Position numbers and translations under genes: made by a program. A stretch of DNA of 64,000 nucleotides, taken from sequence record OR538032.1; one strand, given 5' to 3'. The notes beneath the pieces were generated by a model, which saw only the letters and a list, made by a program, of their open reading frames with translations, made no database searches and was not told the DNA's origin. Positions within the stretch are counted from its first letter, which is position 1. Each line of letters starts with the position of its first letter. Of this stretch, positions 7,319 to 29,285 are shown piece by piece.

Positions 7319-10300
7319 AACGAAGCAACTTCTTCCACCATGGGCGTTTAAGCTCGTGTACTTCGTTCTGAAGCGTGTCTACTTTTGCATTAAGCTCTTT
7401 GATAGCTTCAATCAAAAGACCGTTCATATTGCCGTACGCGACTGATAGAATACGTTCTTCGTCGTCACTTTCCACCACTGCTTCTGGCAGTACTTTTTCC
7501 ACTTCTTGCGCAATCACACCCGTCTCACGAATATATTCGTCAGAATCGAATGAACTACGCTTGTCATATGTATACCCGTTTAATTCACCTACTTTATTGA
7601 GTGCATTATCAATAAGCTTGATGTTTTTCTTCAAACGTCGGTCTGAGTACGCTGTCACGTTACCCGGAGCAGTGAAGTTACCAGTTGAATACTGGAATGA
7701 CCATTGCTTAGTCGTTGAGCTATTCAGCGACGAAACGATCTGAGCCGTATGCGCGCCAGAAGAACTCAAAATAGCACCGAATGAGTGCTGATAACGACCA
7801 CCCGAGTGGTTAATATCACCTTTCATAAAAGCATGATATTCACTAGTACCCGAACTTGATTTGTAGTGATAAAATGGAGCTTGTGACGTGTAATGCGAAG
7901 CATATGCATAAGATGCCGCAGATCCGTAAGCCGTCATCCTACCCGTAGACAACAATGCACTTTGAACTGTTACATCAGTAAAGTCATTCCCATAGTTGAC
8001 AATCAAGTTTGACGTTGTACCTACTAATGCTCGCTTATCACGAATCTTGAAATCTTGACCGCCATTTGAGCTAATCAAAGAAGACCCGAGATAGGTTGCT
8101 GTGGTAGCAGTCGTAGCCGATGTCGCCGTCGTAGCGTTGCCACTCAGAGAACCCACGAATGTCGGCGCTGTTACACTATGCGCAAACACCGCAGTTCCGT
8201 TTTCGTTCAACCTGAAATCATCAGATGCACTACCGTTGTATCTAAACGCCATGACGCCGTTTTGATGGTCAAGCTGCCAGTAGTTATCGCTGTACGTACT
8301 GTCCATCAAGTTCAACTGAACGTTTGTGTGTCGAATCGTCAACTGTCCATTGATCGTATCCCCTGCTTTGCTAACCGCACCAATTTCAGCCAATGACCAT
8401 GCAACGTTAGCAGATCCGTTTACTGATTTGCCAGTATTACCGATTGTCAATGTACGAGCATTAGCCCACGTCGTCGCTGTACTTGCATTCCCACTCAGTG
8501 GGCCTACAAAGCTACCACTCATAGTCCCGCCGATAACTGATATATTACCAGACGAATTGCAGTCTAGGCGAATGTCATAATCAGCCGTGCTATTAGTCGT
8601 GTGGAAATCAATATATCTCGCAACTTCAAGCACACCAGCAGATGTAACTTTTGCTAGGTATTTGTTAACAATCCCTGCGAATGTTTGAGTTGTCGAGAAC
8701 TCGGAATTTTGTGCAAATCGAGCATCGGATTCAGATTCAGTGTAGTACCGACCATCGTGAGTATGAGAGTCATTTGCCACAGTAACTGTCATTGTCGCAT
8801 TTGAGCTACCGTCAAACGAAACTGCGCCACTTACATCGCCGTTTAGCGTCAGCGTACGAGCAGTAGTCCATTTGTCAGCATTTGGATGATAACCGTCATG
8901 AAACACATTGTTGCTTCCGTATTTCAAAACCCCATCAACTGAAGACAATACCCCGTCAATACCCCAGAAATTTGAGTGATAGTTGCCGCCCGTATTGACA
9001 AACTCATGGTAAACTTCAACAGTATAGTTCGATGTGTGCCATGTCGAAACAGCAGGATCGCCATCTACATCAATGAAGAAATTGATTCTATTACTACTTG
9101 CCGCAGATTGAGTAGTATTAACAACCGTCCATGCACCGTTGATATTAGTGAATGTCGCGCTAGATGCCGAGTCAGTAGTTCCAGTGCCCGTAATTACAGC
9201 TCGTACACGGATAGAACCTTGCGTAATCGCAGCCCCATTTTGGTCTAACAACTTAGCAGGAGCATTGATGTTTACTGCATAGTCTCGGCGATACTTGTAC
9301 ATCCCTCCGTAGAAATCACCCGTGATCTCTTTAGCTGTCCATGTTACATTACTCGTACCATCTACTGACTTACCAGTGTTACCGATTGTCAACGTCCTTG
9401 CAGTTGTCCATTTATCAGCATTCGGGTGATAAGCATCGTGAAACACACGTTGGTTTACTTTCGCGAAAATCTCACCTTCAACTTCAAGACCAGCAGGTGA
9501 AGCAACACCGCCATTCTGACGCAGAATCAATGCCTGACCATTACCACCAGCCGTGTTAATATCACCGTCAGTGATCTCGTGAATTAGCTCAAGGTTTTGA
9601 CCAGCACCTGTAATCCAGTTGATACCTGAATTGTTGTTTGCGTAATCAGTTTCATTGAAACTCAAACGCCCAGATGCTTTGCTGATTGCCACGTTACCAG
9701 TGAATGTGTCACCTGCCACGTTTGCAAATCGAGCATCAGATTCAGTCTCAGTGTAGTAACGCCCGTCGTGTGTATGTGAATCGTTCGCTACAGTAGCTGT
9801 AACGGTCACAGTTGCATTAGCCGACCCATCTATAGTCATAGACGCAGAACCGCTCACATCGCCCGTTAGAGTCGTTGTTAGAGTGCGTGCAGTTGTCCAC
9901 TTATCAGCATTTGGGTGATAGGCGTCGTGAAACACATTGTTATCTTTGTACTTGATCGCAGTTGTATTAACAACAAACCCACTTGCAGTCGCTGAACCGA
10001 CTTGCAACGTACCATCAGTACGAACTAGAGACGAGCCGAAGTATACGCCAGATGTAAATGCAGCTTGGTCATTGATTCTCAACCATGTATCGAACCCGCG
10101 AATTGCAGTTTTCGCGTTGATGTCAATGTTCTCAATGCCGAAGTTTGCTGCCGTTGCATCAATACGAAATCGAGTTGTCGCTGTATCATTTTCACGTAAA
10201 CTAAAATTGCCACCGTCGTTGATCAAATACCAACGTTTTGTACCGTCATTATCTTGAAGCAACAAACGAGGCGAAGCACCACGAATTTCAATTTCATTCG

Positions 10301-10571
10301 CCGTGTTTGTCAGTTTACCCGTCATCGTATCGCCGATCTTTTGAACGTAGCCACCGCCCGCAATCGGGGCAAATCGAGCATCAGATTCAGCTTTTGTAAA
10401 TGCAGAAGTCGTCCCACCGTTACCTAGTTCGCCTGGCAGTGGTGTGTCGTGTTCTGTGTAAATTTTGTAGCCTTGGTAGCGGATAGTCTCGCCTTGCGGG
10501 TCAAAGCGAAGATTTCCCCCGTGCCAGACTATATTACCACCAATTGCGGTAGTTGATCTTAGTTCTGCCAT
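7314..10571 (-). CDS. 37: long tail fibre distal subunit (gp37-like) with S74 intramolecular chaperone
   Basis: repeated YHPNADKWTTARTL and DSHTHDGRYYTE modules; YSDRRLKKNI...GYTY...GVIAQEV C-terminus. Confidence 0.85.
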   Translation of the reverse strand: MAELRSTTAIGGNIVWHGGNLRFDPQGETIRYQGYKIYTEHDTPLPGELGNGGTTSAFTKAESDARFAPIAGGGYVQKIGDTMTGKLTNTANEIEIRGASPRLLLQDNDGTKRWYLINDGGNFSLRENDTATTRFRIDATAANFGIENIDINAKTAIRGFDTWLRINDQAAFTSGVYFGSSLVRTDGTLQVGSATASGFVVNTTAIKYKDNNVFHDAYHPNADKWTTARTLTTTLTGDVSGSASMTIDGSANATVTVTATVANDSHTHDGRYYTETESDARFANVAGDTFTGNVAISKASGRLSFNETDYANNNSGINWITGAGQNLELIHEITDGDINTAGGNGQALILRQNGGVASPAGLEVEGEIFAKVNQRVFHDAYHPNADKWTTARTLTIGNTGKSVDGTSNVTWTAKEITGDFYGGMYKYRRDYAVNINAPAKLLDQNGAAITQGSIRVRAVITGTGTTDSASSATFTNINGAWTVVNTTQSAASSNRINFFIDVDGDPAVSTWHTSNYTVEVYHEFVNTGGNYHSNFWGIDGVLSSVDGVLKYGSNNVFHDGYHPNADKWTTARTLTLNGDVSGAVSFDGSSNATMTVTVANDSHTHDGRYYTESESDARFAQNSEFSTTQTFAGIVNKYLAKVTSAGVLEVARYIDFHTTNSTADYDIRLDCNSSGNISVIGGTMSGSFVGPLSGNASTATTWANARTLTIGNTGKSVNGSANVAWSLAEIGAVSKAGDTINGQLTIRHTNVQLNLMDSTYSDNYWQLDHQNGVMAFRYNGSASDDFRLNENGTAVFAHSVTAPTFVGSLSGNATTATSATTATTATYLGSSLISSNGGQDFKIRDKRALVGTTSNLIVNYGNDFTDVTVQSALLSTGRMTAYGSAASYAYASHYTSQAPFYHYKSSSGTSEYHAFMKGDINHSGGRYQHSFGAILSSSGAHTAQIVSSLNSSTTKQWSFQYSTGNFTAPGNVTAYSDRRLKKNIKLIDNALNKVGELNGYTYDKRSSFDSDEYIRETGVIAQEVEKVLPEAVVESDDEERILSVAYGNMNGLLIEAIKELNAKVDTLQNEVHELKRPWWKKLLRL

Positions 10572-10616
10572 GTTATTCTCTCATTGAGTACGTTTATCAT
10601 GTATTTATGAAGATAC

Positions 10617-10643
10617 AAAAAAAGCTCCCGAAGGAGCTTTTAT
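10617..10643 (-). terminator. terminator between the two fibre genes
   Basis: AAAAAAGCTCC-CGAA-GGAGCTTTT; late promoter variant CATAAATA at 10602-10609 follows. Confidence 0.8.
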
Positions 10644-13600
10644 TAACTTAGTAGTGCTTCTAGTCTAGCGATTCGTTCTTCAAGAGCTTCGCGTTTGCGC
10701 TTCTCTTCTTTAATACCCTCAATCAATAGACCAACCATGTTTCCATATGCAACTGCATAGTGACCGTCAGCATCGCCACCTGATTCAACAACAGCTTCTG
10801 GTAGAACTTCAAGAACTTCTTGAGCAATCACACCAGTTTGTCGTGGACATTCAACGTCTGTACGATCATATGTATAACCGTTCAGGCGGTCAATCTTCTC
10901 AAGCGGATTTGTGATTCGCTCAACGTTAGTCTTGACTCGCGCATCCGAGTATGCTGTAATATTACCAGCAGATTGAATGCTTTGGTAGTAGTAGAAACCA
11001 CTCGTCGCATCAGTTGAGTTATGAATCCATGATGTATTACGAGCACCGAAATGCCATGTCTTGCCGTTGTCAGAACGGAAAACCCAGCTTCCTTCGTTTG
11101 CCGAGTTTTGCATATAACGTGTCGTATCGCCACCCAATGCAATGACGTTCTTAACCATCAGGTTACCACCAGTCGTCAACGACATTGCACCATCAGTTGC
11201 TGCGTCACCCTCATCACGCCACAAGAATCCACGATCCGTATCGTTGTTCATTGTGAACGTCATTGCGTAGTCATTCAACCAACCAAAGGATTGTGCGCTT
11301 GCCATGCCGATTGTATATGAACCACTAGACCACACTCGAATCTTATCATAAGAAGAAACACCAGTTGAGATCAATGTCCCATTGACTGTGAAGCTCCCAT
11401 CAGAATGAGTATGATTATGTGAATCATCAGCAACCGCAACAGATAATGTAACGTTTGCACTACCGTCGATTGAAGCTGAACCACTTACATCACCATTCAG
11501 TGTCAGAGTACGAGCAGTAGTCCATTTATCAGCATTCGGGTGATAGTCATCCATGAAAATTCGCTGCGTACTTTCCCACGATGTCGAAAGACCACGTCGG
11601 AAATACAGTTCATTATCAGAAAGAGTATTACTACCACTTATCAATTGCCATACTTGATACGCATCACTCCAACCTTTAACAGTCAACGCAGAGTACCAAC
11701 TTGGAAGCCCACTCGGTCTGTCTAAGTTCGTGAATTGTGCCGATACTGTGCGATCCGGCAAATCATTCGGGACGACTGACGCTGCTCTAGTGTCTTGAAT
11801 TGAAATCGAATTATGTGTGTGCGAATCATTGATAACAGTAGCAACTAAAGTTACGTCCGAACTACCATTAATCGAAACCGAACCTGATAGATCCCCTGAT
11901 AGTGCCAATGTACGAGCATTAGCCCATGTCGTCGCTGTACTTGCATTACCACTCAATGCCCCGATGAATGTCGGTGCTGTGATATTGACAGTCGATGTAA
12001 TTGAAGTACTCTTAACTGAAAATTGTTTATTGTCAGCTAGTATACCACCGACGCCAAGAACAACCTCACCTGCCGCATTTGAGTTGTGCAAATACACCGC
12101 ACTGCGGTTACCAATCAAGCCAAATTTATCAACCTTAACCGTTTCAGATGCAGGAGCAGTATTACCAACAGAGTCAGTGATGAACAATGATGAACTCATC
12201 GTATCACCAGTTTTCTGCACGTAGCCACCACCCGCAATAGGCGCGAATCTTGCGTCGGCTTCAGTCTCGGTGTAGTAACGACCATCGTGCGTATGTGAGT
12301 CATTAGCAACCACAACAGACAAAGTAACGTTTGAGCTACCGTCGATTGAAGCTGAACCGCTCACGTCGCCATTCAATGTCAACGTTCTTGCAGTTGTCCA
12401 CTTATCAGCATTCGGGTGATATTCATCATCGAAAATCTTCATCCACGCTGAACTAACACCAGACTCTCGACGCTTCCACCATAGGCGATTACTATTCTGA
12501 CCCATTGCAAGAGTCATTGCATAACCGTTACCGTTGTTGTGCTCAGTATGAACGCCCCACATCCAACCAGTCTCTTCAGCAGGCGTACCAGTTATCGAAC
12601 TATTAACATCAATGAAGCCGCTTCGCTGATAATCATCAATGTCACCAGACGCCAATTGCATCGAGCCGATTTTACCCGCAGATGTCCCACCGAAGCCGTA
12701 AACAACGTTACTAGACTGAGCTTGAGTAGTAGGCACGTTCAAGTAACCAGTCATCGTATCGCCAGTCGCGTTTACGAAACGAGCATCAGATTCTGCTTCG
12801 GTGTAGTAACGACCATCGTGAGTATGAGAGTCGTCAGCAACTGTAACTGCGAGTGAAATATTCGAGCTACCATCAAACGAAACTGATCCACTAACATCAC
12901 CAGATAACGTTAACGTTCTTGCAGTTGTCCACTTATCGGCTTCTGGGTGATAGTCAGTATGGTACATGTAAACCCAGTCTTCCCACACGTCTGCGTATCT
13001 CGTACGAAGTGCAATTGTACCTGAGTTACCGCTTATACCATATGGATAAGCTACTTGAGTCGCGTTAGTAGTCGATCCATATGTCATTGTCTGAGCATAC
13101 CAGTAACCAGTAAACCCAACAGGTCGATTTAGACCTTGTGACAACTTGTTGTAAAATCCACCACGATAAAGAGTATCCCAGTCCACTGTAGTATCAACAC
13201 CCGATAGAGTACGCCCCGTAGCGATATACTCTGGGTTACTCGCGCTCAGACCGACTTCAGCGTATGTCGTATGATTCGGGACAACTGTACTAATCGTGAC
13301 GTTTGAACTACCATCAATTGAAACTGAACCAGTTACTTCGCCCGATAGAGTAAGCGTTCTTGCAGTCGTCCATTTATCGGCATTTGGGTGATAGTTGTCT
13401 GCAAAAATTCGCTGCGTTGTGTTTAGATACCCAATACCGTTGATAACAACGTTGTTGTTTGATCTAGAACCGTACATGACAACCGATTCAGAATTCGATT
13501 CACGTCTGATAATCTGCCATTGATTGACATCACCATCATAGTGATAACGCACACCGTGATTTCCGTTGTCTTCCGTTAGATATAGACTTGCATCGGTGTT

Positions 13601-13907: not shown

Positions 13908-14438
13908 CTATTTGCGCCCTTTACGATTTGCCTTATTTGCTTTTCTTTTTGCTCTACGCAACTCTTTGCGTTTTGCGATTTTGTCTGCACGTCTAACTGC
14001 ATCATAATCCGCAGCACACGACGCAGCAAACGCATCAGGCTTGAAAACGGGTTCTTGACCCACGTATCCCAAGATAGTGCCCTTAGCTTCGTTATACGCA
14101 ACGTGTGAACGATGGGATGGGTCTGGGTTGATGTCAACGTGAACTTCAAACCCACGAGTACCACACATTGGCTTAACACGCAGGGCGGTTTCACCTGCTT
14201 TATAGACTTCATTCATCAAACGACTACGAATACCATCTTTACAAGACATGTACGCTGGTTCAGTTTCGATAGATTTGAATACTTGAGCGCCTTTACTACC
14301 CTCAAGGTGAATGATGATTACAGTAGCGTAACTAATCATATCACTCTTACGCTTGCTATCACACCCAACATAAATCGTACTGTTCGGATGACTGTTATTG
14401 ATAGCTGTTTCAATTGCTTCCCAATCGAACATTTTCAC
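13908..14438 (-). CDS. RNase H-like protein, YkuK family
   Basis: YVGCDS, RLMNEV, EVHVDIN, FKPDAFAASCAAD. Confidence 0.8.
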   Translation of the reverse strand: MKMFDWEAIETAINNSHPNSTIYVGCDSKRKSDMISYATVIIIHLEGSKGAQVFKSIETEPAYMSCKDGIRSRLMNEVYKAGETALRVKPMCGTRGFEVHVDINPDPSHRSHVAYNEAKGTILGYVGQEPVFKPDAFAASCAADYDAVRRADKIAKRKELRRAKRKANKANRKGRK

Positions 14439-14482: not shown

Positions 14483-15919
14483 TTAAAAGCTGTAGCGATC
14501 AACGCCTACAGTTTTCAGCATGATCTTGACTGGCTCAAGCTCACCACCTAACAGTGAAGTCAGGATAGATGGGCTACAACCCGATACCAGTGCAGTACCC
14601 GCTTCGCCAGCTTTAACCGGAACGTTGCCAAGACGACCACGAATGTTCCAGAAGACTAGTTGTGGCATTTCATAGCCAGCACGTGCGTACATAGCTTTGA
14701 TTGCGTCGAAGTTTGCACGTTCGCCGCGACCGTACCAGCCACCACCAGTATTTGCTTGGTCGAATTCCATGTCGCTCATGATAAGCAACTTAGTTGGCAT
14801 TTCTTCTTGTGAAAGATTTGCACGTTTTGCACGTTCTAACAGAACGTTGAAGCACTTACCGATGTTTGTGCTCATGTCTTCGCCTGAGCGATTCATGTTG
14901 TCAAGACGCTCTTTTAGTGAGCTACCGCGCAACTGGTGGAAGTGCGGATCGCTTGAGAACGAAATGAACTGATCTTTGAAGATGCCTTCATTGCGTTCAG
15001 CAACATAGATGCCAAGAGACATTGCAACTTGCTTACAAGTCACACCCGAACGATCTGTACCTGCGTTGATTGGCGTGCTCATAGAGCCAGATACGTCAAC
15101 AACAGGGATGATGCGCTCATCAGAGCCTTCCATGTAGTTCGGCAGAGCTTTCCATTGCTCGTTCGCTACAGACGCATTGCCATGACTAACGCTCTTAACG
15201 ACATCATATGGGAACAATGCACCAGCGTTGATCTTCGCTTCACCTTTTTGAAGTGACTCGATGTAGCTTGTGTAACGAGCAGAAGCGTTACGACCGAATG
15301 CTTGTTGATAACGAGCAGACGCTACAGATGGCAACTTACCAAAGTCGATTGCATCCCATTCTTGAGCACACATCTTCTGTTCAACAGTGTCAGACAAAAG
15401 TGCTAGAATCTTACGCCACTGCTTCGCAGTTACACCAAGAGACTTGATTGTGCGCTTGAACACATGACCGTTTTTGCTGTTTTCACGTGGGAACCACTTA
15501 GCAGCAAGACCGTTCTTGTCGTTTACAATCGCGTTTGACCACAATGTGATCGCGTCTTTCTCAAGACTTGTACCGAACGCAGAAATCAAGTCGTCGAAAC
15601 GACCTAGTTCTGGAATTTTCGACATTACAGCACGAGCTACGTCAGGCTGCTCATTACAAAGTTTAGTGAATAGAGTACGGAAAGTACCACGTTCACCCGC
15701 ACCACCGCGAACATCACGAGACCATAAAAGAATGCGTGTCGCTAGTTCGGGGTTTTCTGCAAACGCACGACCGAACAGTGTTTTAGACTGATCGTTACCA
15801 CGCATAGCAGCAATACCGAAGAACAAGTTTAGACACTCGTTACCTGAAGTGCTGTGAGTAACTGCACCGTTTGCTGTACGTGAATCGTTTGATTGCATAG
15901 CGTTCATAAATGCTGACAT
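14483..15919 (-). CDS. DUF2828 protein (TROVE/Ro60-like helical domain plus vWA)
   Basis: TANGAVTHSTSG, RDVRGGAGER, LAAKWFPRE; vWA MIDAS DVSGS, SDMEFD, VFWNI. Confidence 0.85.
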   Translation of the reverse strand: MSAFMNAMQSNDSRTANGAVTHSTSGNECLNLFFGIAAMRGNDQSKTLFGRAFAENPELATRILLWSRDVRGGAGERGTFRTLFTKLCNEQPDVARAVMSKIPELGRFDDLISAFGTSLEKDAITLWSNAIVNDKNGLAAKWFPRENSKNGHVFKRTIKSLGVTAKQWRKILALLSDTVEQKMCAQEWDAIDFGKLPSVASARYQQAFGRNASARYTSYIESLQKGEAKINAGALFPYDVVKSVSHGNASVANEQWKALPNYMEGSDERIIPVVDVSGSMSTPINAGTDRSGVTCKQVAMSLGIYVAERNEGIFKDQFISFSSDPHFHQLRGSSLKERLDNMNRSGEDMSTNIGKCFNVLLERAKRANLSQEEMPTKLLIMSDMEFDQANTGGGWYGRGERANFDAIKAMYARAGYEMPQLVFWNIRGRLGNVPVKAGEAGTALVSGCSPSILTSLLGGELEPVKIMLKTVGVDRYSF

Positions 15920-15967
15920 TGTTTATTCCTCATATTAAATTGCTGTAAAATGTCGTTTTGATGTGAT

Positions 15968-15996
15968 GATTATACACGGATTTGAACCCGTGTAAA
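15968..15996 (-). promoter_or_regulatory. T4-type early promoter for the DUF2828 gene
   Basis: GTTTAC-N17-TATAAT with TG and upstream A-tract. Confidence 0.8.
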
Positions 15997-19074: not shown

Positions 19075-19325
19075 ACACAGACATTCGAGAAGTGTTTTAT
19101 CGTCTTTGCTTAAATCTCAATTGACTATCTCGATGTTTCTCATCGAGAAAATACCCATGATTCGGCATGAGACCTATTTCGTTTTACAGTACGAACACCG
19201 TCTTAATGGTCATTTCCTACCACGAGAATGCGACAGGCTCACGTCATCACTGAGAAAGCAGCTAGTGCGCCTCATTACTATTAAAGTTTGCTTCTTTGAT
19301 TAGTAATATTGCTGTACAATGTCTT
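19075..19325 (-). ncRNA. about 250-nt structured ncRNA carrying the CWGCA motif (paralog 1)
   Basis: terminal stem AGACATT/AATGTCT; 3' block homologous to 21350-21566. Confidence 0.7.
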
Positions 19326-21349: not shown

Positions 21350-21566
21350 TACAGACAATACCGAAGTGTTTTTCGTCTTTTGCATTAATCGGAGTTGACT
21401 AGCTTATTGATTCTCAACAAGCAAATATCGTCTGTTTCAGCGACGCGCCTATCTGACTATTTCTAGGCAGAGAGAATCTTTCCTTTCAAGCTGCGCCGAA
21501 GCACTGCCCAGGTTAAGATCATTACCATTTTTAAGTAATTTTCAATTGTTTGCTGTATATTGTCTC
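21350..21566 (-). ncRNA. about 215-nt structured ncRNA carrying the CWGCA motif (paralog 2)
   Basis: terminal stem AGACAATA/TATTGTCT; 3' block homologous to 19075-19325. Confidence 0.7.
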
Positions 21567-22174: not shown

Positions 22175-22180
22175 GTTACT

Positions 22181-22293
22181 GAGTGTTATTACTTGCGTCG
22201 TCCAGACCAGAGATACCAACTCTGAAAGGGAATCGAACCCCAAACATTTCTTTTCGTAAGAAGAATATTAGTAATTGTTTGCTGAAAACACTC
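22181..22293 (-). ncRNA. circularly permuted tRNA-like RNA (YrlA/Y-RNA-like architecture)
   Basis: terminal stems with bulged TTCAGCAAACA, internal T-arm GGGG-TTCGATT-CCC, loop-closed acceptor-like stem. Confidence 0.7.
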
Positions 22294-23290: not shown

Positions 23291-23349
23291 CAGCAATCCT
23301 TTTCTCTTTTTCCAAATAAAAGTTTTGTATTGTTTGCTGAAAGATTGCT
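23291..23349 (-). ncRNA. short hairpin RNA carrying the CWGCA motif
   Basis: AGCAATCTTT/AAGGATTGCT stem, CAGCAAACAAT bulge. Confidence 0.55.
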
Positions 23350-23764: not shown

Positions 23765-23853
23765 ACAGCTTGCGTTCTTTGGTCTGTTTATCGCTGTCTG
23801 AACTGAGTTCGCCGAGCGATCAATAGATTAAGTTAAATTGCAGTATGCAAGCT
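23765..23853 (-). ncRNA. about 87-nt RNA carrying the CWGCA motif
   Basis: AGCTTGC/GCAAGCT stem followed by ATACTGCAA; inner ATCGCT/AGCGAT stem. Confidence 0.6.
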
Positions 23854-24418: not shown

Positions 24419-24454
24419 ATTATTCGTTTTTGAACGTTACTTCGTTCTTCTTCA

Positions 24455-24650
24455 TTGTACATGATGTTTATATCGTTGTAAACATCGTTTTTGAAAAATT
24501 TTCATTCAGTTTTGAATGAGATTTCGCTTTTCTCTATTGTACATGATGTTTTCGTCATTGTAAACATCTTTCTGAATTTATTTTGAAGAACTTAACGTTT
24601 TCATTTTTCTATGTGTTAATCTTAACACTCGCTCAAGACATCTTAAACAC
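24455..24650 (-). promoter_or_regulatory. three tandem early promoters driving the downstream tRNA block
   Basis: two near-duplicate TTTACA-N17-TACAAT and one TTTAAG-N17-TAAGAT. Confidence 0.7.
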
Positions 24651-25729: not shown

Positions 25730-25845
25730 TGGTAGTCGGGGCTGGATTCGAACCAGCGACCACGTGCTTAACAGGCAATTGAAGGAGTGCTGGAGCGATA
25801 CTTGTCAGTATCATTCTTCGTGCTCTACCACTGAGCTACCCGACT
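25730..25845 (-). ncRNA. tRNA-Asn(GTT) scaffold with 41-nt motif insertion in the anticodon stem
   Basis: deleting 25778-25818 gives a regular 75-nt cloverleaf with CCA. Confidence 0.8.
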
Positions 25846-25850
25846 ATGAA

Positions 25851-26372
25851 TTATTTAACTTTGAACTTCAAATTACGCCAGTCAAAGTTTCGTTTGTTCT
25901 TTGTGTTGTAGAACGTGCCCCAATCAATAGCAATCGGACAGTTCTTACTACCTACACGAGCGATAAATACATCGTGAGTCTCGCTGTAACGCTCTCTAAG
26001 CTCCTTTAAACGCTTATCGTAGTTAGCGATATACTCAGCACACGCTTTGTTGTAAGCTGCTTTAGAGAAGCGTTCGTTACTCGAAAATACATTACCTAGA
26101 TAAGGTCGAATAACACGAACTCGTTCTTTAGACCAACCCATACTAAAGCTGTTTTCAATCTCACCTGAGATTTCACCAGTCTTCTTACATCTAGCAAGAA
26201 TGACCCAGCAACGTTCACGCCGAAAATCTTTTCGTACATACACGTTAACGTGCTTGTCAATGTACTCTTGATAACGAGCGTTATACTCAGCACGCAGTTT
26301 ATTGCGCACTTCAGGCGACATTGCAGCTCGTTCTTCTTTCGAAAACGCTTGTGCAAATTTCAATGGTTTCAT
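25851..26372 (-). CDS. basic hypothetical protein (173 aa)
   Basis: GAGGA RBS before ATG 26372. Confidence 0.7.
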   Translation of the reverse strand: MKPLKFAQAFSKEERAAMSPEVRNKLRAEYNARYQEYIDKHVNVYVRKDFRRERCWVILARCKKTGEISGEIENSFSMGWSKERVRVIRPYLGNVFSSNERFSKAAYNKACAEYIANYDKRLKELRERYSETHDVFIARVGSKNCPIAIDWGTFYNTKNKRNFDWRNLKFKVK

Positions 26373-26385
26373 TATAATTTCCTCT

Positions 26386-26625
26386 TGGCGCCGCTCGTGT
26401 GAATCGAACACACGTCAAACACAACACCTCGTCCACCCAATTAGAGTTTCGAAGTAAGAGCTAATCAGCATTTCGGAGCAATCGAGCGTTATTTCTACGA
26501 GTGAGCTTTCGACAACTCACACGCACTTTCTACTCGGTCCCAGTGATTCGGTACCAACGCAGGTTGCGAACCTACGTCTGCACTAATGTTGGGAAAACAC
26601 TGCGTATTGTACACCAGTTAGCGGC
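26386..26625 (-). ncRNA. 240-nt RNA with a tmRNA-like tRNA-like domain
   Basis: GCCGCT/AGCGGC acceptor, G73-CCA, GAC-GTGTG-TTCGATT-CACAC, P2-like ACAATAC/GTGTTGT. Confidence 0.7.
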
Positions 26626-26628
26626 ATT

Positions 26629-26859
26629 TTAAAGATAGCTATCAAAGACAGCATCATCAACTTCTTCAATATTGATGTCAGCGTAACATTCGTTCGCAAT
26701 TGCTTGAATCTCACCTATTGAAACTGTACCTGAGTACAAAACAACAGCATCATTCGGAATCACGACATCACACATGTATTTGTTAAACATTGCAGTTCTG
26801 AAATCAGAATCAACAGAGTAACCGTGCAACGACGTGATAACTAGCAATTTATGTGACAT
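26629..26859 (-). CDS. hypothetical protein
   Basis: GAGGA RBS; promoter TTGACA-N17-TAGTAT at 26890-26918. Confidence 0.7.
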   Translation of the reverse strand: MSHKLLVITSLHGYSVDSDFRTAMFNKYMCDVVIPNDAVVLYSGTVSIGEIQAIANECYADINIEEVDDAVFDSYL

Positions 26860-26938
26860 AATGTTTTCCTCGTGTAGTTGATAATGTGTATACTACACGT
26901 TGATGAAACGCATGTCAACAACTTTTTCAAATTATTTT

Positions 26939-27015
26939 TGGTAGCCCCTCTCGGATTCGAACCGAGAACCTGACGATTATGAGTCGTCTGCTACTACCGT
27001 TACAGCTAAGGGGCT
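26939..27015 (-). tRNA. tRNA-Ile2(CAT, lysidine type) or tRNA-Met
   Basis: AGCCCCT acceptor and GACGA-CTCATAA-TCGTC arm resemble ileX. Confidence 0.8.
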
Positions 27016-27382
27016 ATCGTTCTAGAAATCTACCAACTTTAGCAGCGAAGATGTTTGCTTCTTCGGCAATCAAAGCAGTTGATTTTATTTGATGAAAAGC
27101 GTCTTGTTGATGCAGAACATCTAGTTTACCAGCGCATTTCATCAGTTCTTTTACTGATTGCATAATCTCAATGTTATCAAGCTGACTAGCATCAGGGTGA
27201 TAATTGAGACTATCTAAGACAGGGAGTACTTGTTGATAGTAACCCATGCCGATGAAGTTTATCATAAGTCTGTATTGCATTTCAACAGCAAATGTACAAT
27301 ATTTTCGAAGATTGCGCTTTACAATCTCACAACGATGCAATATACAATCAAGCTCGTCATTTATGTCATCAAACTTATTCAT
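27014..27382 (-). CDS. hypothetical protein
   Basis: GAGG RBS before ATG 27382. Confidence 0.6.
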   Translation of the reverse strand: MNKFDDINDELDCILHRCEIVKRNLRKYCTFAVEMQYRLMINFIGMGYYQQVLPVLDSLNYHPDASQLDNIEIMQSVKELMKCAGKLDVLHQQDAFHQIKSTALIAEEANIFAAKVGRFLER

Positions 27383-27395
27383 AAAACCTCGAAAG

Positions 27396-27517
27396 TGGTG
27401 GAGAGTACGGGATTCGAACCACGTGACCAAAAGATTTACCTAGTTAGGGTTTGCAGCATGAATGCTTATCAGAATTCTTTAACATTCTTTTGCTCTACCA
27501 GACTGAGCTAACTCTCC
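27396..27517 (-). ncRNA. tRNA-scaffolded RNA A (motif module in place of anticodon loop)
   Basis: GGAGAGT/ACTCTCC-ACCA, D arm, T arm, about 50-nt insert. Confidence 0.75.
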
Positions 27518-27523
27518 AGAATT

Positions 27524-27641
27524 TGAGGGTGAAGTACAGGACTCGAACCTGCGACCTCCGGCGTGCATAAAATGCAGCATGAAATCTTAACAGACTTCTA
27601 TTGTTTAGACCGGCATTCTAACCAACTGAACTAACTTCACC
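27524..27641 (-). ncRNA. tRNA-Asp-like scaffolded RNA B
   Basis: GTTCAGTTGGTTAGAATGCCGG...CACGCCGGAGGTCGCAGGTTCGAGTCC with insert in the anticodon loop. Confidence 0.75.
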
Positions 27642-27649
27642 ATAAAAAC

Positions 27650-27782
27650 ATATTGAGCAGGGTGCAGGACTCGAACCTGCGTCACGATCTTGAAATGATA
27701 TGCGAATTGATTGCAGAATACAAACTTAACAGCTTGCGTTTATGCTACGTGTGCTAGCCACTACACCAACCCTGCTCAATAT
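27650..27782 (-). ncRNA. tRNA-scaffolded RNA C with 14-bp terminal stem
   Basis: ATATTGAGCAGGGT inverted repeat, D and T arms, motif insert. Confidence 0.75.
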
Positions 27783-28032
27783 GTTCTTGGGCGTGCTTAC
27801 GCAGATCGATTCTTCACTACGTAAGCACAAAATCCTCTAGTTTATATTTGCCTTAGCTAATCACAACACAATCTGGAATCGTGCGCTTTAATTACGGGAT
27901 GAATGACCCGTTCGCATGTGATTAGCGTAGAACAGCTACGCACCGTTTCTTCTTCAATGTCCAAGGCAAAGAGGACTATGAATACTAGTGCGAGAAGATA
28001 TACAATCAAATTGCTCACCTCGCTTAATAAGT

Positions 28033-28179
28033 GAGAGTACATTGGTCGAGTGTAACGGAATCGAACCGTTCCCACGATCTCCCTATGATATGCGTAAATT
28101 GGTTGCTGAATATAATCATGTCTGATTACAGTATGCTACGTGTGCTGCCACTACACCAACACTCGACCAATGTACTCTC
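28033..28179 (-). ncRNA. tRNA-scaffolded RNA D with 21-bp terminal stem, paralog of C
   Basis: GAGAGTACATTGGTCGAGTGT perfect inverted repeat, D and T arms, motif insert. Confidence 0.75.
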
Positions 28180-28582: not shown

Positions 28583-28837
28583 TTAAACGGAAATGATAAT
28601 GCCGCTTTCAGTCTCACCTCGTTCAAGCGCAGCGTGCTTGATCTGAAGTTGTGATACTGCTTGCTGAAGTTCAATAATAGCTTTGTCATAAAGCTTGTTG
28701 TTCTCTTTAAGCAAAGCAATTTGATCGGTCTGCATACCAATGATGTACGTTAGTAGAACAACGTTCTCATCAGTCGTCAGCGTTTCAGGCGCTTCATTGT
28801 ACTTCTTCAGCACCGCTTCGGTAGATAGATCAGTCAT
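28583..28837 (-). CDS. coiled-coil hypothetical protein
   Basis: TAATG coupling to 57B. Confidence 0.65.
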   Translation of the reverse strand: MTDLSTEAVLKKYNEAPETLTTDENVVLLTYIIGMQTDQIALLKENNKLYDKAIIELQQAVSQLQIKHAALERGETESGIIISV

Positions 28838-29285
28838 TATTAGCAACCCATTCTAGATCTAGTGGTTCGATATATTCATCGACAAGACGAACCTCTGTAT
28901 TGATGAACATAGGGGTGATTACGTCGTCATAAGACAATGTGACGTGCGGAGTATAGTCAGGGTAATCGTGAGTACCACCGATAGAGATAAGGTCTTCGTG
29001 ACGTTCTACAAGAGCAGGACATGACATCTTAGCAACGACCGCGTGTTTACCGTCTTGCGTTTTCCAACAGTCAACTTGTTCAACAGTGGCAACGAAAGTG
29101 GTATCTACAACAGGCACATCAATTTGCTTACGACTATAAAGCACAGTCACGTGAAATTTATCTGGATCTAACGGATTTTTTAGACGAAGCGTTTTTTGCA
29201 AGCGAACTAGCTCTTGCTTACTTGCTTCGTCTAATTTGATACCAACGTAAGTTCCCTGACTCTCAAGGAACTTAGATAGTTTCAT
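28830..29285 (-). CDS. 57B: gp57B / Acb1 2H-phosphoesterase (anti-CBASS nuclease)
   Basis: HVTVLYSR and YTPHVTLSY HxT motifs, WKTQDG, EYIEPLDLEW; synteny with 57A and 1. Confidence 0.9.
   Translation of the reverse strand: MKLSKFLESQGTYVGIKLDEASKQELVRLQKTLRLKNPLDPDKFHVTVLYSRKQIDVPVVDTTFVATVEQVDCWKTQDGKHAVVAKMSCPALVERHEDLISIGGTHDYPDYTPHVTLSYDDVITPMFINTEVRLVDEYIEPLDLEWVANND

What the first reader, a model, noticed from the sequence alone, without database searches (positions are those of the whole stretch)
15911..15957. Motif copy sequesters the DUF2828 start codon: predicted translational autoregulation
The leader from the gene's own early promoter reads GACATT-TTA-CAGCA-ATTTAATAT-GAGGA-ATAAAC-AATGTC-AG. 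The partner strand AATGTC contains the AUG, the conserved C-AG is supplied by codons 2-3, and the Shine-Dalgarno lies in the loop. Protein binding would lock the RBS and AUG, tying protein level to free motif-RNA. This is the strongest internal link between this protein and the RNA motif.
Basis: partly seen in the sequence, partly recalled or inferred. Interest (0 to 1): 0.87.

Follow-up and report, generated by a model that had tools for sequence, protein, structure and literature searches.

The report
RNA motif copy over start codon
The mRNA of a phage Ro60-like RNA-binding protein carries, over its own ribosome-binding site, a small copy of a stem-plus-CAGCAA signature that also marks ten other RNAs of this phage and lies beside this protein's relatives in many other phages, so the protein probably shuts off its own synthesis.

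Summary
On the minus strand, 15954-15913 reads GACAUU-UUA-CAGCAA-(20 nt, GAGGA inside)-AAUGUC-AG, and the AUG of the DUF2828/DUF7788 gene lies in the 3' strand. The hairpin is weak (-3.5 kcal/mol, no better than shuffles).

It is nevertheless a complete copy of a real motif. The motif is a 6-bp helix whose 5' strand starts with G and runs into N-U-N-CNGCAA. Its 3' strand ends in C followed by (U/A)G. The window has six "open" copies and five hairpin-closed copies inside pseudo-tRNAs, all on the minus strand. Shuffles give 0.3.

Helix covariation is seen at syntenic sites in related phages. The strict motif flanks DUF2828 genes in distant phages (57 sense, 1 antisense) and in bacterial assemblies (42 vs 4). 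In five distant lineages it ends 13-16 nt before the DUF2828 AUG.

The protein's predicted fold matches Ro60. Some motif-enclosed RNAs score weakly as YrlA. The signature matches Dictyostelium Class I RNAs.

Translational autorepression by mimicry is the best reading, but protein binding and repression are inferred, not shown.

The parts
15969..15996 (-). Sigma-70-type early promoter TTTACA-16-TATAAT, with an inverted repeat between the hexamers (PeSL type). The predicted transcript start is near 15962.
   Evidence: 11 of 12 matches. The promoter is conserved in relatives. PeSL elements are described in PMC4122927. The transcript start is inferred.
15949..15954 (-). 5' helix strand GACAUU. Its first G is the conserved 5' G of the motif.
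   Evidence: The same hexamer occurs at syntenic copies in 7 phages.
15940..15948 (-). Spacer UUA (middle U invariant) followed by core CAGCAA.
   Evidence: (invariant T22, C24, G26, C27, A28 in 27 closed copies).
15927..15931 (-). Shine-Dalgarno GAGGA, inside the 20-nt enclosed loop.
   Evidence: It lies 7 nt before the AUG.
15913..15920 (-). 3' helix strand AAUGUC (AUG at 15919-15917) followed by the conserved AG.
14483..15919 (-). DUF2828/DUF7788 gene (478 aa). It is a Ro60-like RNA-binding protein with a vWA/MIDAS domain (phrog_850).
19078..19323 (-). Open motif copy closing a 246-nt ncRNA: GACAUU-GUA-CAGCAA...AAUGUC-UG. It starts 12 nt after tRNA-Ser(gct).
21352..21564 (-). Open motif copy closing a 213-nt ncRNA: GACAAU-AUA-CAGCAA...AUUGUC-UG.
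   Evidence: (compensatory changes in F86 and 1.081.O).
22179..22293 (-). Open motif copy (115 nt) after tRNA-Gln: GAGUGU-UUU-CAGCAA...ACACUC-AG.
23291..23348 (-). Open motif copy (58 nt) after tRNA-Trp: GCAAUC-UUU-CAGCAA...GAUUGC-UG. Its best Rfam match is Dicty_Class_I_RNA.
   Evidence: 27.4 bits, below the gathering score of 41.5.
23766..23852 (-). Open motif copy (87 nt) after tRNA-Tyr: GCUUGC-AUA-CUGCAA...GCAAGC-UG.
25733..25846 (-). Pseudo-tRNA E, with a closed (hairpin) motif copy at 25815-25782.
   Evidence: It corresponds to KVP40 tRNA-Pseudo-3.
27397..27641 (-). Pseudo-tRNAs C and D, with closed motif copies at 27600-27567 and 27479-27446.
   Evidence: They correspond to KVP40 tRNA-Pseudo-5 and -4. 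A sub-threshold YrlA hit spans their junction.
27650..28172 (-). tRNA-like RNAs A and B, with closed motif copies at 28131-28098 and 27739-27706.

Best explanation
The 5' leader of the DUF2828 mRNA is a miniature, loop-open copy of the RNA module that this Ro60-like protein most likely recognises on its other RNAs. The module is a 6-bp helix. One strand begins with G and continues into N-U-N-CNGCAA. The other strand ends in C followed by (U/A)G.

Ten other copies are transcribed from the tRNA cluster of the same phage. Five close ncRNAs of 58-246 nt and five sit in the anticodon arms of pseudo-tRNAs.

On its own the leader helix is too weak to block ribosomes. When free protein exceeds the available motif RNAs, it binds the leader and clamps the helix. 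The AUG is then held in the stem and the SD in a 20-nt enclosed loop, so initiation is blocked. This is negative feedback by molecular mimicry.

Shown: the motif, its copies, the helix covariation, its association with the gene family, and the Ro60-like predicted fold. Inferred: that DUF2828 is the binding protein, and that binding represses translation.
For: Motif and copies:
- The leader matches every conserved position of the motif.
- There are 6 strict open copies on the minus strand against 0.305 expected by shuffling.
- 27 closed copies align without gaps, with a covarying stem.

Helix:
- Compensatory changes occur at syntenic ncRNA ends: GACAAU/AUUGUC, GGCAAU/AUUGCC, GAUAAU/AUUAUC.
- RNAalifold predicts the same topology for an RNA just downstream of distant DUF2828 genes. 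4 of its 7 pairs show compensatory changes.

Link to the protein:
- Strict motif hits number 57 sense against 1 antisense in IMG/VR DUF2828 loci, in 45 of 77 loci.
- Control loci give 5 hits in 947 kb on both strands.
- DUF2828 loci in bacterial and archaeal assemblies give 42 sense against 4 antisense.
- Neighbouring genes are not conserved in the distant loci.
- The predicted structure (pLDDT 82) matches Ro60 at E = 1e-8, TM 0.5-0.62.
- Sub-threshold YrlA hits lie inside motif helices.

Position at the ribosome-binding site:
- The helix overlaps the AUG in 9 Vibrio-phage lineages.
- It lies over the SD in D479, with a compensatory change.
- It ends 13-16 nt before the AUG in L045, L056, L074, L226 and L222.
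- The helix is weak (-3.5 kcal/mol), which suits a protein-dependent switch.
Against: - There are no binding or expression data.
- Within the nine lineages whose helix overlaps the AUG, neither strand varies, so there is no covariation there.
- AAUGUC partly follows from a conserved Met-Ser N-terminus. L040 has AAUGUCUG without any upstream box.
- The D479 minimum-energy fold uses other pairings.
- D482 and CZ01 keep only UUACAGCAA next to the AUG and have no helix.
- The closed-form covariance model scores the leader at only 10.6 bits, E = 3.
- Most distant homologs have no motif in their leader.
- Sequence similarity of the protein to TROVE proteins is marginal (E = 0.11).
Confidence: 0.5

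Rival explanations
1. The motif is a processing or decay signal. The nuclease that cuts motif-bounded ncRNAs out of the long tRNA-cluster transcripts recognises the helix and its flanks. In the leader it cuts at the motif borders, which removes the 5' end or severs the start codon. Expression would then be set by cleavage, not by occlusion. The Ro60-like protein could recruit the nuclease, or play no part.
For: Five open copies sit exactly where RNAs must be excised, starting 8-18 nt after tRNA 3' ends. In Dictyostelium the same G...CUG signature marks the mature RNA ends. An RNaseH-like gene (PF04308) follows DUF2828 in this phage.
Against: The RNaseH-like gene is not conserved next to distant DUF2828 genes. 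The closed copies inside pseudo-tRNAs have no ends to process. The strand-specific association is with DUF2828, not with any nuclease.
Confidence: 0.2
2. The leader copy is a loading or stabilising site rather than a repressor. A protein-bound helix 8 nt from the 5' end would protect the mRNA from 5'-end-dependent decay, or would nucleate RNP assembly in cis. The effect on expression would be neutral or positive.
For: The motif starts about 8 nt from the predicted transcript start. In several distant lineages the motif RNA is simply co-transcribed upstream of the gene.
Against: In this phage the enclosed loop holds nothing but the SD, and the 3' strand is the start codon itself. That geometry is hard to reconcile with unimpeded initiation when the helix is clamped.
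Confidence: 0.15
3. Only the 5' box GACAUU-UUA-CAGCAA is functional in the leader. Its complementarity to AAUGUC-AG is coincidental, because the 3' half is dictated by the coding sequence Met-Ser-Ala.
For: L040 has AAUGUCUG at its start codon with no upstream box. D482 and CZ01 keep UUACAGCAA without a helix. There is no covariation in the AUG-overlapping helix. The folding energy is unremarkable.
Against: A complete short-range copy is expected 0.035 times per window, and this one falls on the RBS of the one gene family linked to the motif. Every other box in the window has a perfect partner followed by WG. D479 changed both box and partner, and uses AGC for Ser-2.
Confidence: 0.1

Closest known systems
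Dictyostelium Class I RNAs (Rfam RF01414; Kjellin et al. 2021, PMC7919456)
   Same: A short stem joins the 5' and 3' ends. The 5'-most G is invariant. A conserved single-stranded ...CUUACAGCAA follows the 5' strand directly. The 3' end is ...C-UG, and the interior is variable and A/U-rich. The Rfam consensus is GaUcuC-CUUA-CAGCAA-UuaAA...GagAuC-UG. RF01414 is the top Rfam match for the 58-nt window copy (27.4 bits) and for the RNA downstream of a distant DUF2828 gene (24.9 bits).
   Different: The phage spacer is one base shorter. Scores are below the gathering threshold of 41.5 bits, and the leader itself gives no hit. The phage copies enclose 20-225 nt, also occur in a hairpin-closed form, and one lies in an mRNA leader. 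Class I RNAs were reported as unique to Dictyostelia, with Rnp1A/CIBP as the direct binder.
Ro60 with Y RNA / bacterial Rsr with YrlA (Chen et al. 2014, PMC4201824)
   Same: A ring-plus-vWA protein is encoded beside small RNAs whose ends form a terminal stem carrying a conserved motif on the 5' strand. tRNA-like modules accompany the stem. The DUF2828 model matches Ro60 structures. YrlA gives sub-threshold hits inside motif helices. Phage TROVE proteins with tRNA-like partners are already known.
   Different: The protein has no Pfam TROVE hit and only marginal sequence similarity to TROVE proteins. The RNA motif (CNGCAA) differs from GNCGAAN0-1G and from GGUCCGA. YrlA scores are 31-39 bits against a gathering score of 69. 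To my knowledge (not searched here), no operator in its own mRNA has been described for Ro60.
Translational operators that mimic the protein's main RNA ligand (MS2 coat protein/replicase hairpin, ribosomal-protein operons, ThrRS, T4 gp32 and RegA)
   Same: A copy of the protein's RNA target lies on its own (or a target) RBS. The start codon is inside the bound helix, as in the MS2 operator. Repression would be titrated by the primary RNA ligands. This comparison rests on established knowledge, not on tests done here.
   Different: Nothing has been tested experimentally here. The helix closes a loop that contains the SD, rather than being a simple hairpin.

Membership tests
Dicty_Class_I_RNA (RF01414) | A short stem joins the 5' and 3' ends, with an invariant 5'-most G. 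| tested here: met
   The leader has G15954 and the 6-bp helix GACAUU/AAUGUC. The other five open copies have the same features.
Dicty_Class_I_RNA (RF01414) | The conserved 11-nt motif CCUUACAGCAA lies next to the 5' strand, and the 3' end is C-UG. | tested here: inconclusive
   The leader has UUACAGCAA (9 of 11) with a spacer one base shorter, and C-AG instead of C-UG.
Dicty_Class_I_RNA (RF01414) | The sequence reaches the Rfam gathering score of 41.5 bits. | tested here: not met
   The leader gives no hit at E <= 10. The best phage copies score 27.4 and 24.9 bits.
Dicty_Class_I_RNA (RF01414) | It is a free 42-65 nt RNA made from its own gene in dictyostelids. | tested here: not met
   This element is the 5' leader of a phage mRNA.
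Y RNA / YrlA | A terminal stem formed by the RNA ends carries the Ro60-binding motif (GGUCCGA or GNCGAAN0-1G). | tested here: not met
   A terminal stem is present, but the conserved sequence is N-U-N-CNGCAA. The YrlA motif is taken from PMC4201824.
Y RNA / YrlA | The RNA has a tRNA-like module and reaches the Rfam gathering score of 69 bits. | tested here: not met
   The leader has no such module. Other copies score 31-39 bits.
Y RNA / YrlA | The RNA is encoded next to a Ro60-type protein gene. | tested here: met
   The motif flanks DUF2828 genes: 57 sense against 1 antisense, and 42 against 4. The protein fold matches Ro60.
Ro60 / TROVE proteins (for the DUF2828 product) | The protein has a helical-repeat ring plus a vWA domain with a MIDAS motif. 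| tested here: met
   The AlphaFold model (pLDDT 82.4) matches 2i91, 1yvr and 9l5y at E = 1e-8 to 4e-8, TM 0.5-0.62. The DVSGS motif is present.
Ro60 / TROVE proteins (for the DUF2828 product) | The sequence belongs to the TROVE domain family. | tested here: not met
   Pfam gives only DUF2828 and DUF7788. A family profile against PDB TROVE chains gives E = 0.11.
Autoregulatory operator by mimicry | The RBS of the protein's own mRNA carries the same RNA module as its primary RNA ligands. | tested here: met
   The identity of the ligands is inferred from genomic association.
Autoregulatory operator by mimicry | The protein binds the operator and represses its own translation. | not testable with these tools
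   This needs binding assays, reporter fusions and toeprinting.

The most novel reading that the evidence does not exclude
The stem-plus-CNGCAA module is the recognition element of a second, widespread Ro60/Y-RNA-like ribonucleoprotein family. Its protein is DUF2828/DUF7788. Its RNAs take several forms: free small RNAs, tRNA-like RNAs and mRNA leaders. It is the same module as in Dictyostelium Class I RNAs. Class I RNAs would then not be a dictyostelid invention. Their unknown function would become testable through a DUF2828-type partner, and the phage leader copy would be its autoregulatory operator.
Probability: 0.3. Interest if true: 0.9.

Novelty: new variant of a known kind. Interest (0 to 1): 0.8.

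Why it matters
- **A candidate RNA partner for an uncharacterised protein.** DUF2828/DUF7788 is a large family found in phages, bacteria and plants. This work gives it a likely RNA partner and a likely Ro60-like mode of action.
- **An explanation for the KVP40 pseudo-tRNAs.** It also covers several unannotated ncRNAs in the tRNA cluster.
- **A directly testable feedback loop.** The prediction is that the protein represses its own translation through the leader copy.
- **A link to Dictyostelium Class I RNAs.** The same stem-plus-CUUACAGCAA signature defines these abundant developmental RNAs. They were reported as unique to social amoebas and their mechanism is unknown. A shared protein partner would open that question to experiment.

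Tried and rejected
- **Folding energy as evidence.** The leader hairpins of five phages fold no better than shuffles.
- **A local hairpin upstream of the box (AAAA/UUUU).** It is not kept across phages (by eye).
- **The box as a DNA element.** The opposite strand reads TTGCTGTAA, which resembles a MotA box. No -10 hexamer lies at the right distance, and all copies are on the transcribed strand (by eye).
- **The box as a general tRNA 3'-trailer signal.** Only 4 of about 15 long trailers have it.
- **Simple CNGCAA counts upstream of homologs.** They show no enrichment: 1.05 against 0.87 per kb. Only the full motif is enriched.
- **An exact 15-mer scan of IMG/VR.** It returned mostly chance matches. 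I reused these loci as controls.
- **The closed-form covariance model R1.** It ranks the leader at only E = 3.
- **The KVP40 genome paper.** It is not held in the library.
- **Whether DDB_G0281243 or any dictyostelid protein is DUF2828-like.** This could not be established.
- **NCBIfam.** It gave no name for the protein.

Full report
**What is there.** The window is identical to Vibrio phage PG216, a KVP40-like T4-type phage. On the minus strand the ORF 15919-14483 encodes a 478-aa protein. It hits Pfam DUF7788 (1.2e-45) and DUF2828 (5.9e-29), and PHROG 850 "RNA-binding protein".

A near-consensus sigma-70 promoter, TTTACA-16-TATAAT, lies at 15996-15969.

By energy alone it is nothing special. 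The MFE is -3.5 kcal/mol, z = +0.38, and 130 of 200 shuffles fold as well. Leaders of related phages behave the same way.

**What the motif is.** Five tRNA-like RNAs at 25.7-28.2 kb carry 45-60 nt inserts in the anticodon arm. KVP40 annotates three of them as pseudo-tRNAs.

Twenty-seven such inserts from eight phages align without a single gap over 34 columns. They show:
- a 5-6 bp stem
- a loop Y-(U/A)-G-N-N-A-A-R
- exactly 8 nt
- then C-N-G-C-A-(A), with an invariant U two bases before the C

All six stem pairs show changes on both sides. The copies were picked for at least 4 of 5 pairs, so the percentage paired is biased. The variety of pair types is not.

A second, "open" form has the same helix and the same flanks but a different connectivity. 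It runs G-N5, N-U-N, CNGCAA, an interior of 20-225 nt, the complementary N5-C, then (U/A)G.

A strict scan finds six open copies, all on the minus strand:
- 23852-23766
- 23348-23291
- 22293-22179
- 21564-21352
- 19323-19078
- 15954-15913 (the leader)

None is found on the plus strand. Dinucleotide shuffles give 0.305 per window on both strands, and 0.035 for interiors of 40 nt or less. The leader therefore matches every conserved position of the motif. Only the apical N-N-A-A of the closed form is replaced by the open ends.

**Is the helix real?** The box GACAWU-NU-ACNGCAA sits at three syntenic places in seven phages, with A, U or C at the variable core position.

At the two ncRNA sites the partner lies 170-250 nt downstream, in a homologous context. 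It co-varies with the box:
- GACAAU/AUUGUC in four phages
- GGCAAU/AUUGCC in F86
- GAUAAU/AUUAUC in 1.081.O
- GACAUU/AAUGUC at the other site

Every partner is followed by UG. Minimum-energy folds of both long RNAs pair their ends (z = -3.0 and -2.7).

In a distant phage group, RNAalifold on its own predicts the same topology. That RNA starts about 15 nt after the DUF2828 stop codon and reads GGUUCC-UUA-CAGCAA...GGAACC-AG. Four of its seven pairs show compensatory changes.

For the leader itself the evidence is thinner. Nine sampled lineages keep both strands unchanged. D479 has GAAAUU...GAUUUC-UG, with the partner over its SD and AGC for Ser-2. However, its MFE uses other pairs. D482 and CZ01 have a homing endonuclease inserted upstream. 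They keep only UUACAGCAA, placed directly before the AUG.

**Link to the protein.**
- In 77 IMG/VR loci with DUF2828 homologs (40-54% identity), the strict motif gives 57 distinct sense-strand hits and 1 antisense hit. 45 loci have at least one.
- 118 unrelated viral loci, each chosen to contain the 5' box, give 5 hits in 947 kb on both strands. Two of those look genuine.
- In 73 DUF2828 loci from bacterial and archaeal assemblies the count is 42 sense against 4 antisense.
- The neighbouring protein genes of this phage are not conserved in those distant loci.

The predicted structure (pLDDT 82.4) matches Ro60 crystal and cryo-EM structures, and a Thermus phage Ro60, at E about 1e-8 and TM 0.5-0.62. 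Sequence similarity to TROVE proteins is marginal.

Some RNAs enclosed by the motif helix give sub-threshold YrlA hits (38-39 bits). In L056 the enclosed element is a circularly permuted tRNA-like fold.

Binding of the motif by DUF2828 is an inference from these associations.

**Leaders elsewhere.** Most distant homologs have the motif RNA downstream of the gene and no motif in the leader. In L045, L056, L074, L226 and L222 a motif copy ends 13-16 nt before the DUF2828 AUG, directly against the SD. In L077 and L066 it ends 25 and 31 nt before the AUG (the first five printed gaps are one too small because of an indexing slip, corrected here by reading the sequences).

**Mechanism.** The best reading is autorepression by mimicry. 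The weak helix lets ribosomes in. Free protein clamps it, which holds the AUG in the stem and the SD in a 20-nt closed loop. The ten other copies compete for the protein. I put this at 0.5.

The rivals are:
- a processing or decay signal (0.2)
- a stabilising or loading site (0.15)
- a functional 5' box whose complement is a by-product of Met-Ser-Ala coding, as in L040 (0.1)

**Comparison with known systems.** The Rfam consensus of Dictyostelium Class I RNAs is GaUcuC-CUUA-CAGCAA-...-GagAuC-UG. This is the same signature with a spacer one base longer. RF01414 is the top Rfam match for two phage copies (27.4 and 24.9 bits, against a gathering score of 41.5). The leader itself gives no hit.

Class I RNAs were reported as unique to Dictyostelia. 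Their pull-down partners are Rnp1A/CIBP, GuaB, NdkC and the uncharacterised DDB_G0281243. I could not determine whether dictyostelids have a DUF2828 protein.

The Ro60/YrlA system is the closest in logic, but the RNA motif and the protein sequence family differ. No Rfam family reaches its gathering score on any of these elements.

Noticed in passing
window 25733-28172 (-): Five tRNA-like RNAs carry 45-60 nt inserts in the anticodon arm. Each insert holds the closed form of the motif. The loop, C-UG-NN-AA-G, looks like an anticodon loop one base short. KVP40 lists three of these RNAs as pseudo-tRNAs.
   Followed up: yes
window 19078-19323 and 21352-21564 (-): Two paralogous, unannotated ncRNAs (246 and 213 nt) lie in the tRNA cluster. 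Their ends pair to form the motif helix. They share a conserved 3' block, ...AAAGACGAUAAAACACUUC..., before the 3' strand.
   Followed up: partly
window 28830-29285 (-): A 57B-like gene is annotated 'RNA ligase' in relatives. It matches Pfam Acb1, the anti-CBASS 2H phosphodiesterase, at 1.7e-46.
   Followed up: partly
window 13908-14438 (-): The gene directly downstream of DUF2828 is RNaseH_like (PF04308, 5.9e-17). It is not conserved next to distant DUF2828 genes.
   Followed up: partly
window 15969-15996 (-): The DUF2828 promoter has an inverted repeat (ACACGG...CCGUGU) between its -35 and -10 hexamers. This is the PeSL arrangement described for T4-like phages.
   Followed up: partly
window 27468-27587 (-): A sub-threshold YrlA (Y RNA-like) hit of 31 bits spans the junction of two tandem pseudo-tRNAs.
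   Followed up: no
window 24422-24584: Two tandem 81-nt direct repeats (74% identical) lie between tRNA genes. Their purpose is unknown.
   Followed up: no
window 8679-13417: The tail-fibre genes contain four to seven diverged internal repeats of 65-200 nt. The Pfam hits are Phage_T4_gp36 and the Peptidase_S74 chaperone domain.
   Followed up: no
L086 (CZ01) 63-656; L088 (D482) 63-653: A GIY-YIG homing endonuclease gene is inserted right upstream of DUF2828. It replaces the promoter and the 5' half of the leader motif.
   Followed up: partly
L056 2872-2986: In a 369-kb phage contig, a circularly permuted tRNA-like element (T arm, closed acceptor stem, D arm) is enclosed by the motif helix. It ends 15 nt before the DUF2828 start codon.
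   Followed up: partly
L074 782-1124; L044 5125-5333: A permuted tmRNA lies 2 kb upstream of one distant DUF2828 gene, and a group I intron lies downstream of another.
   Followed up: no
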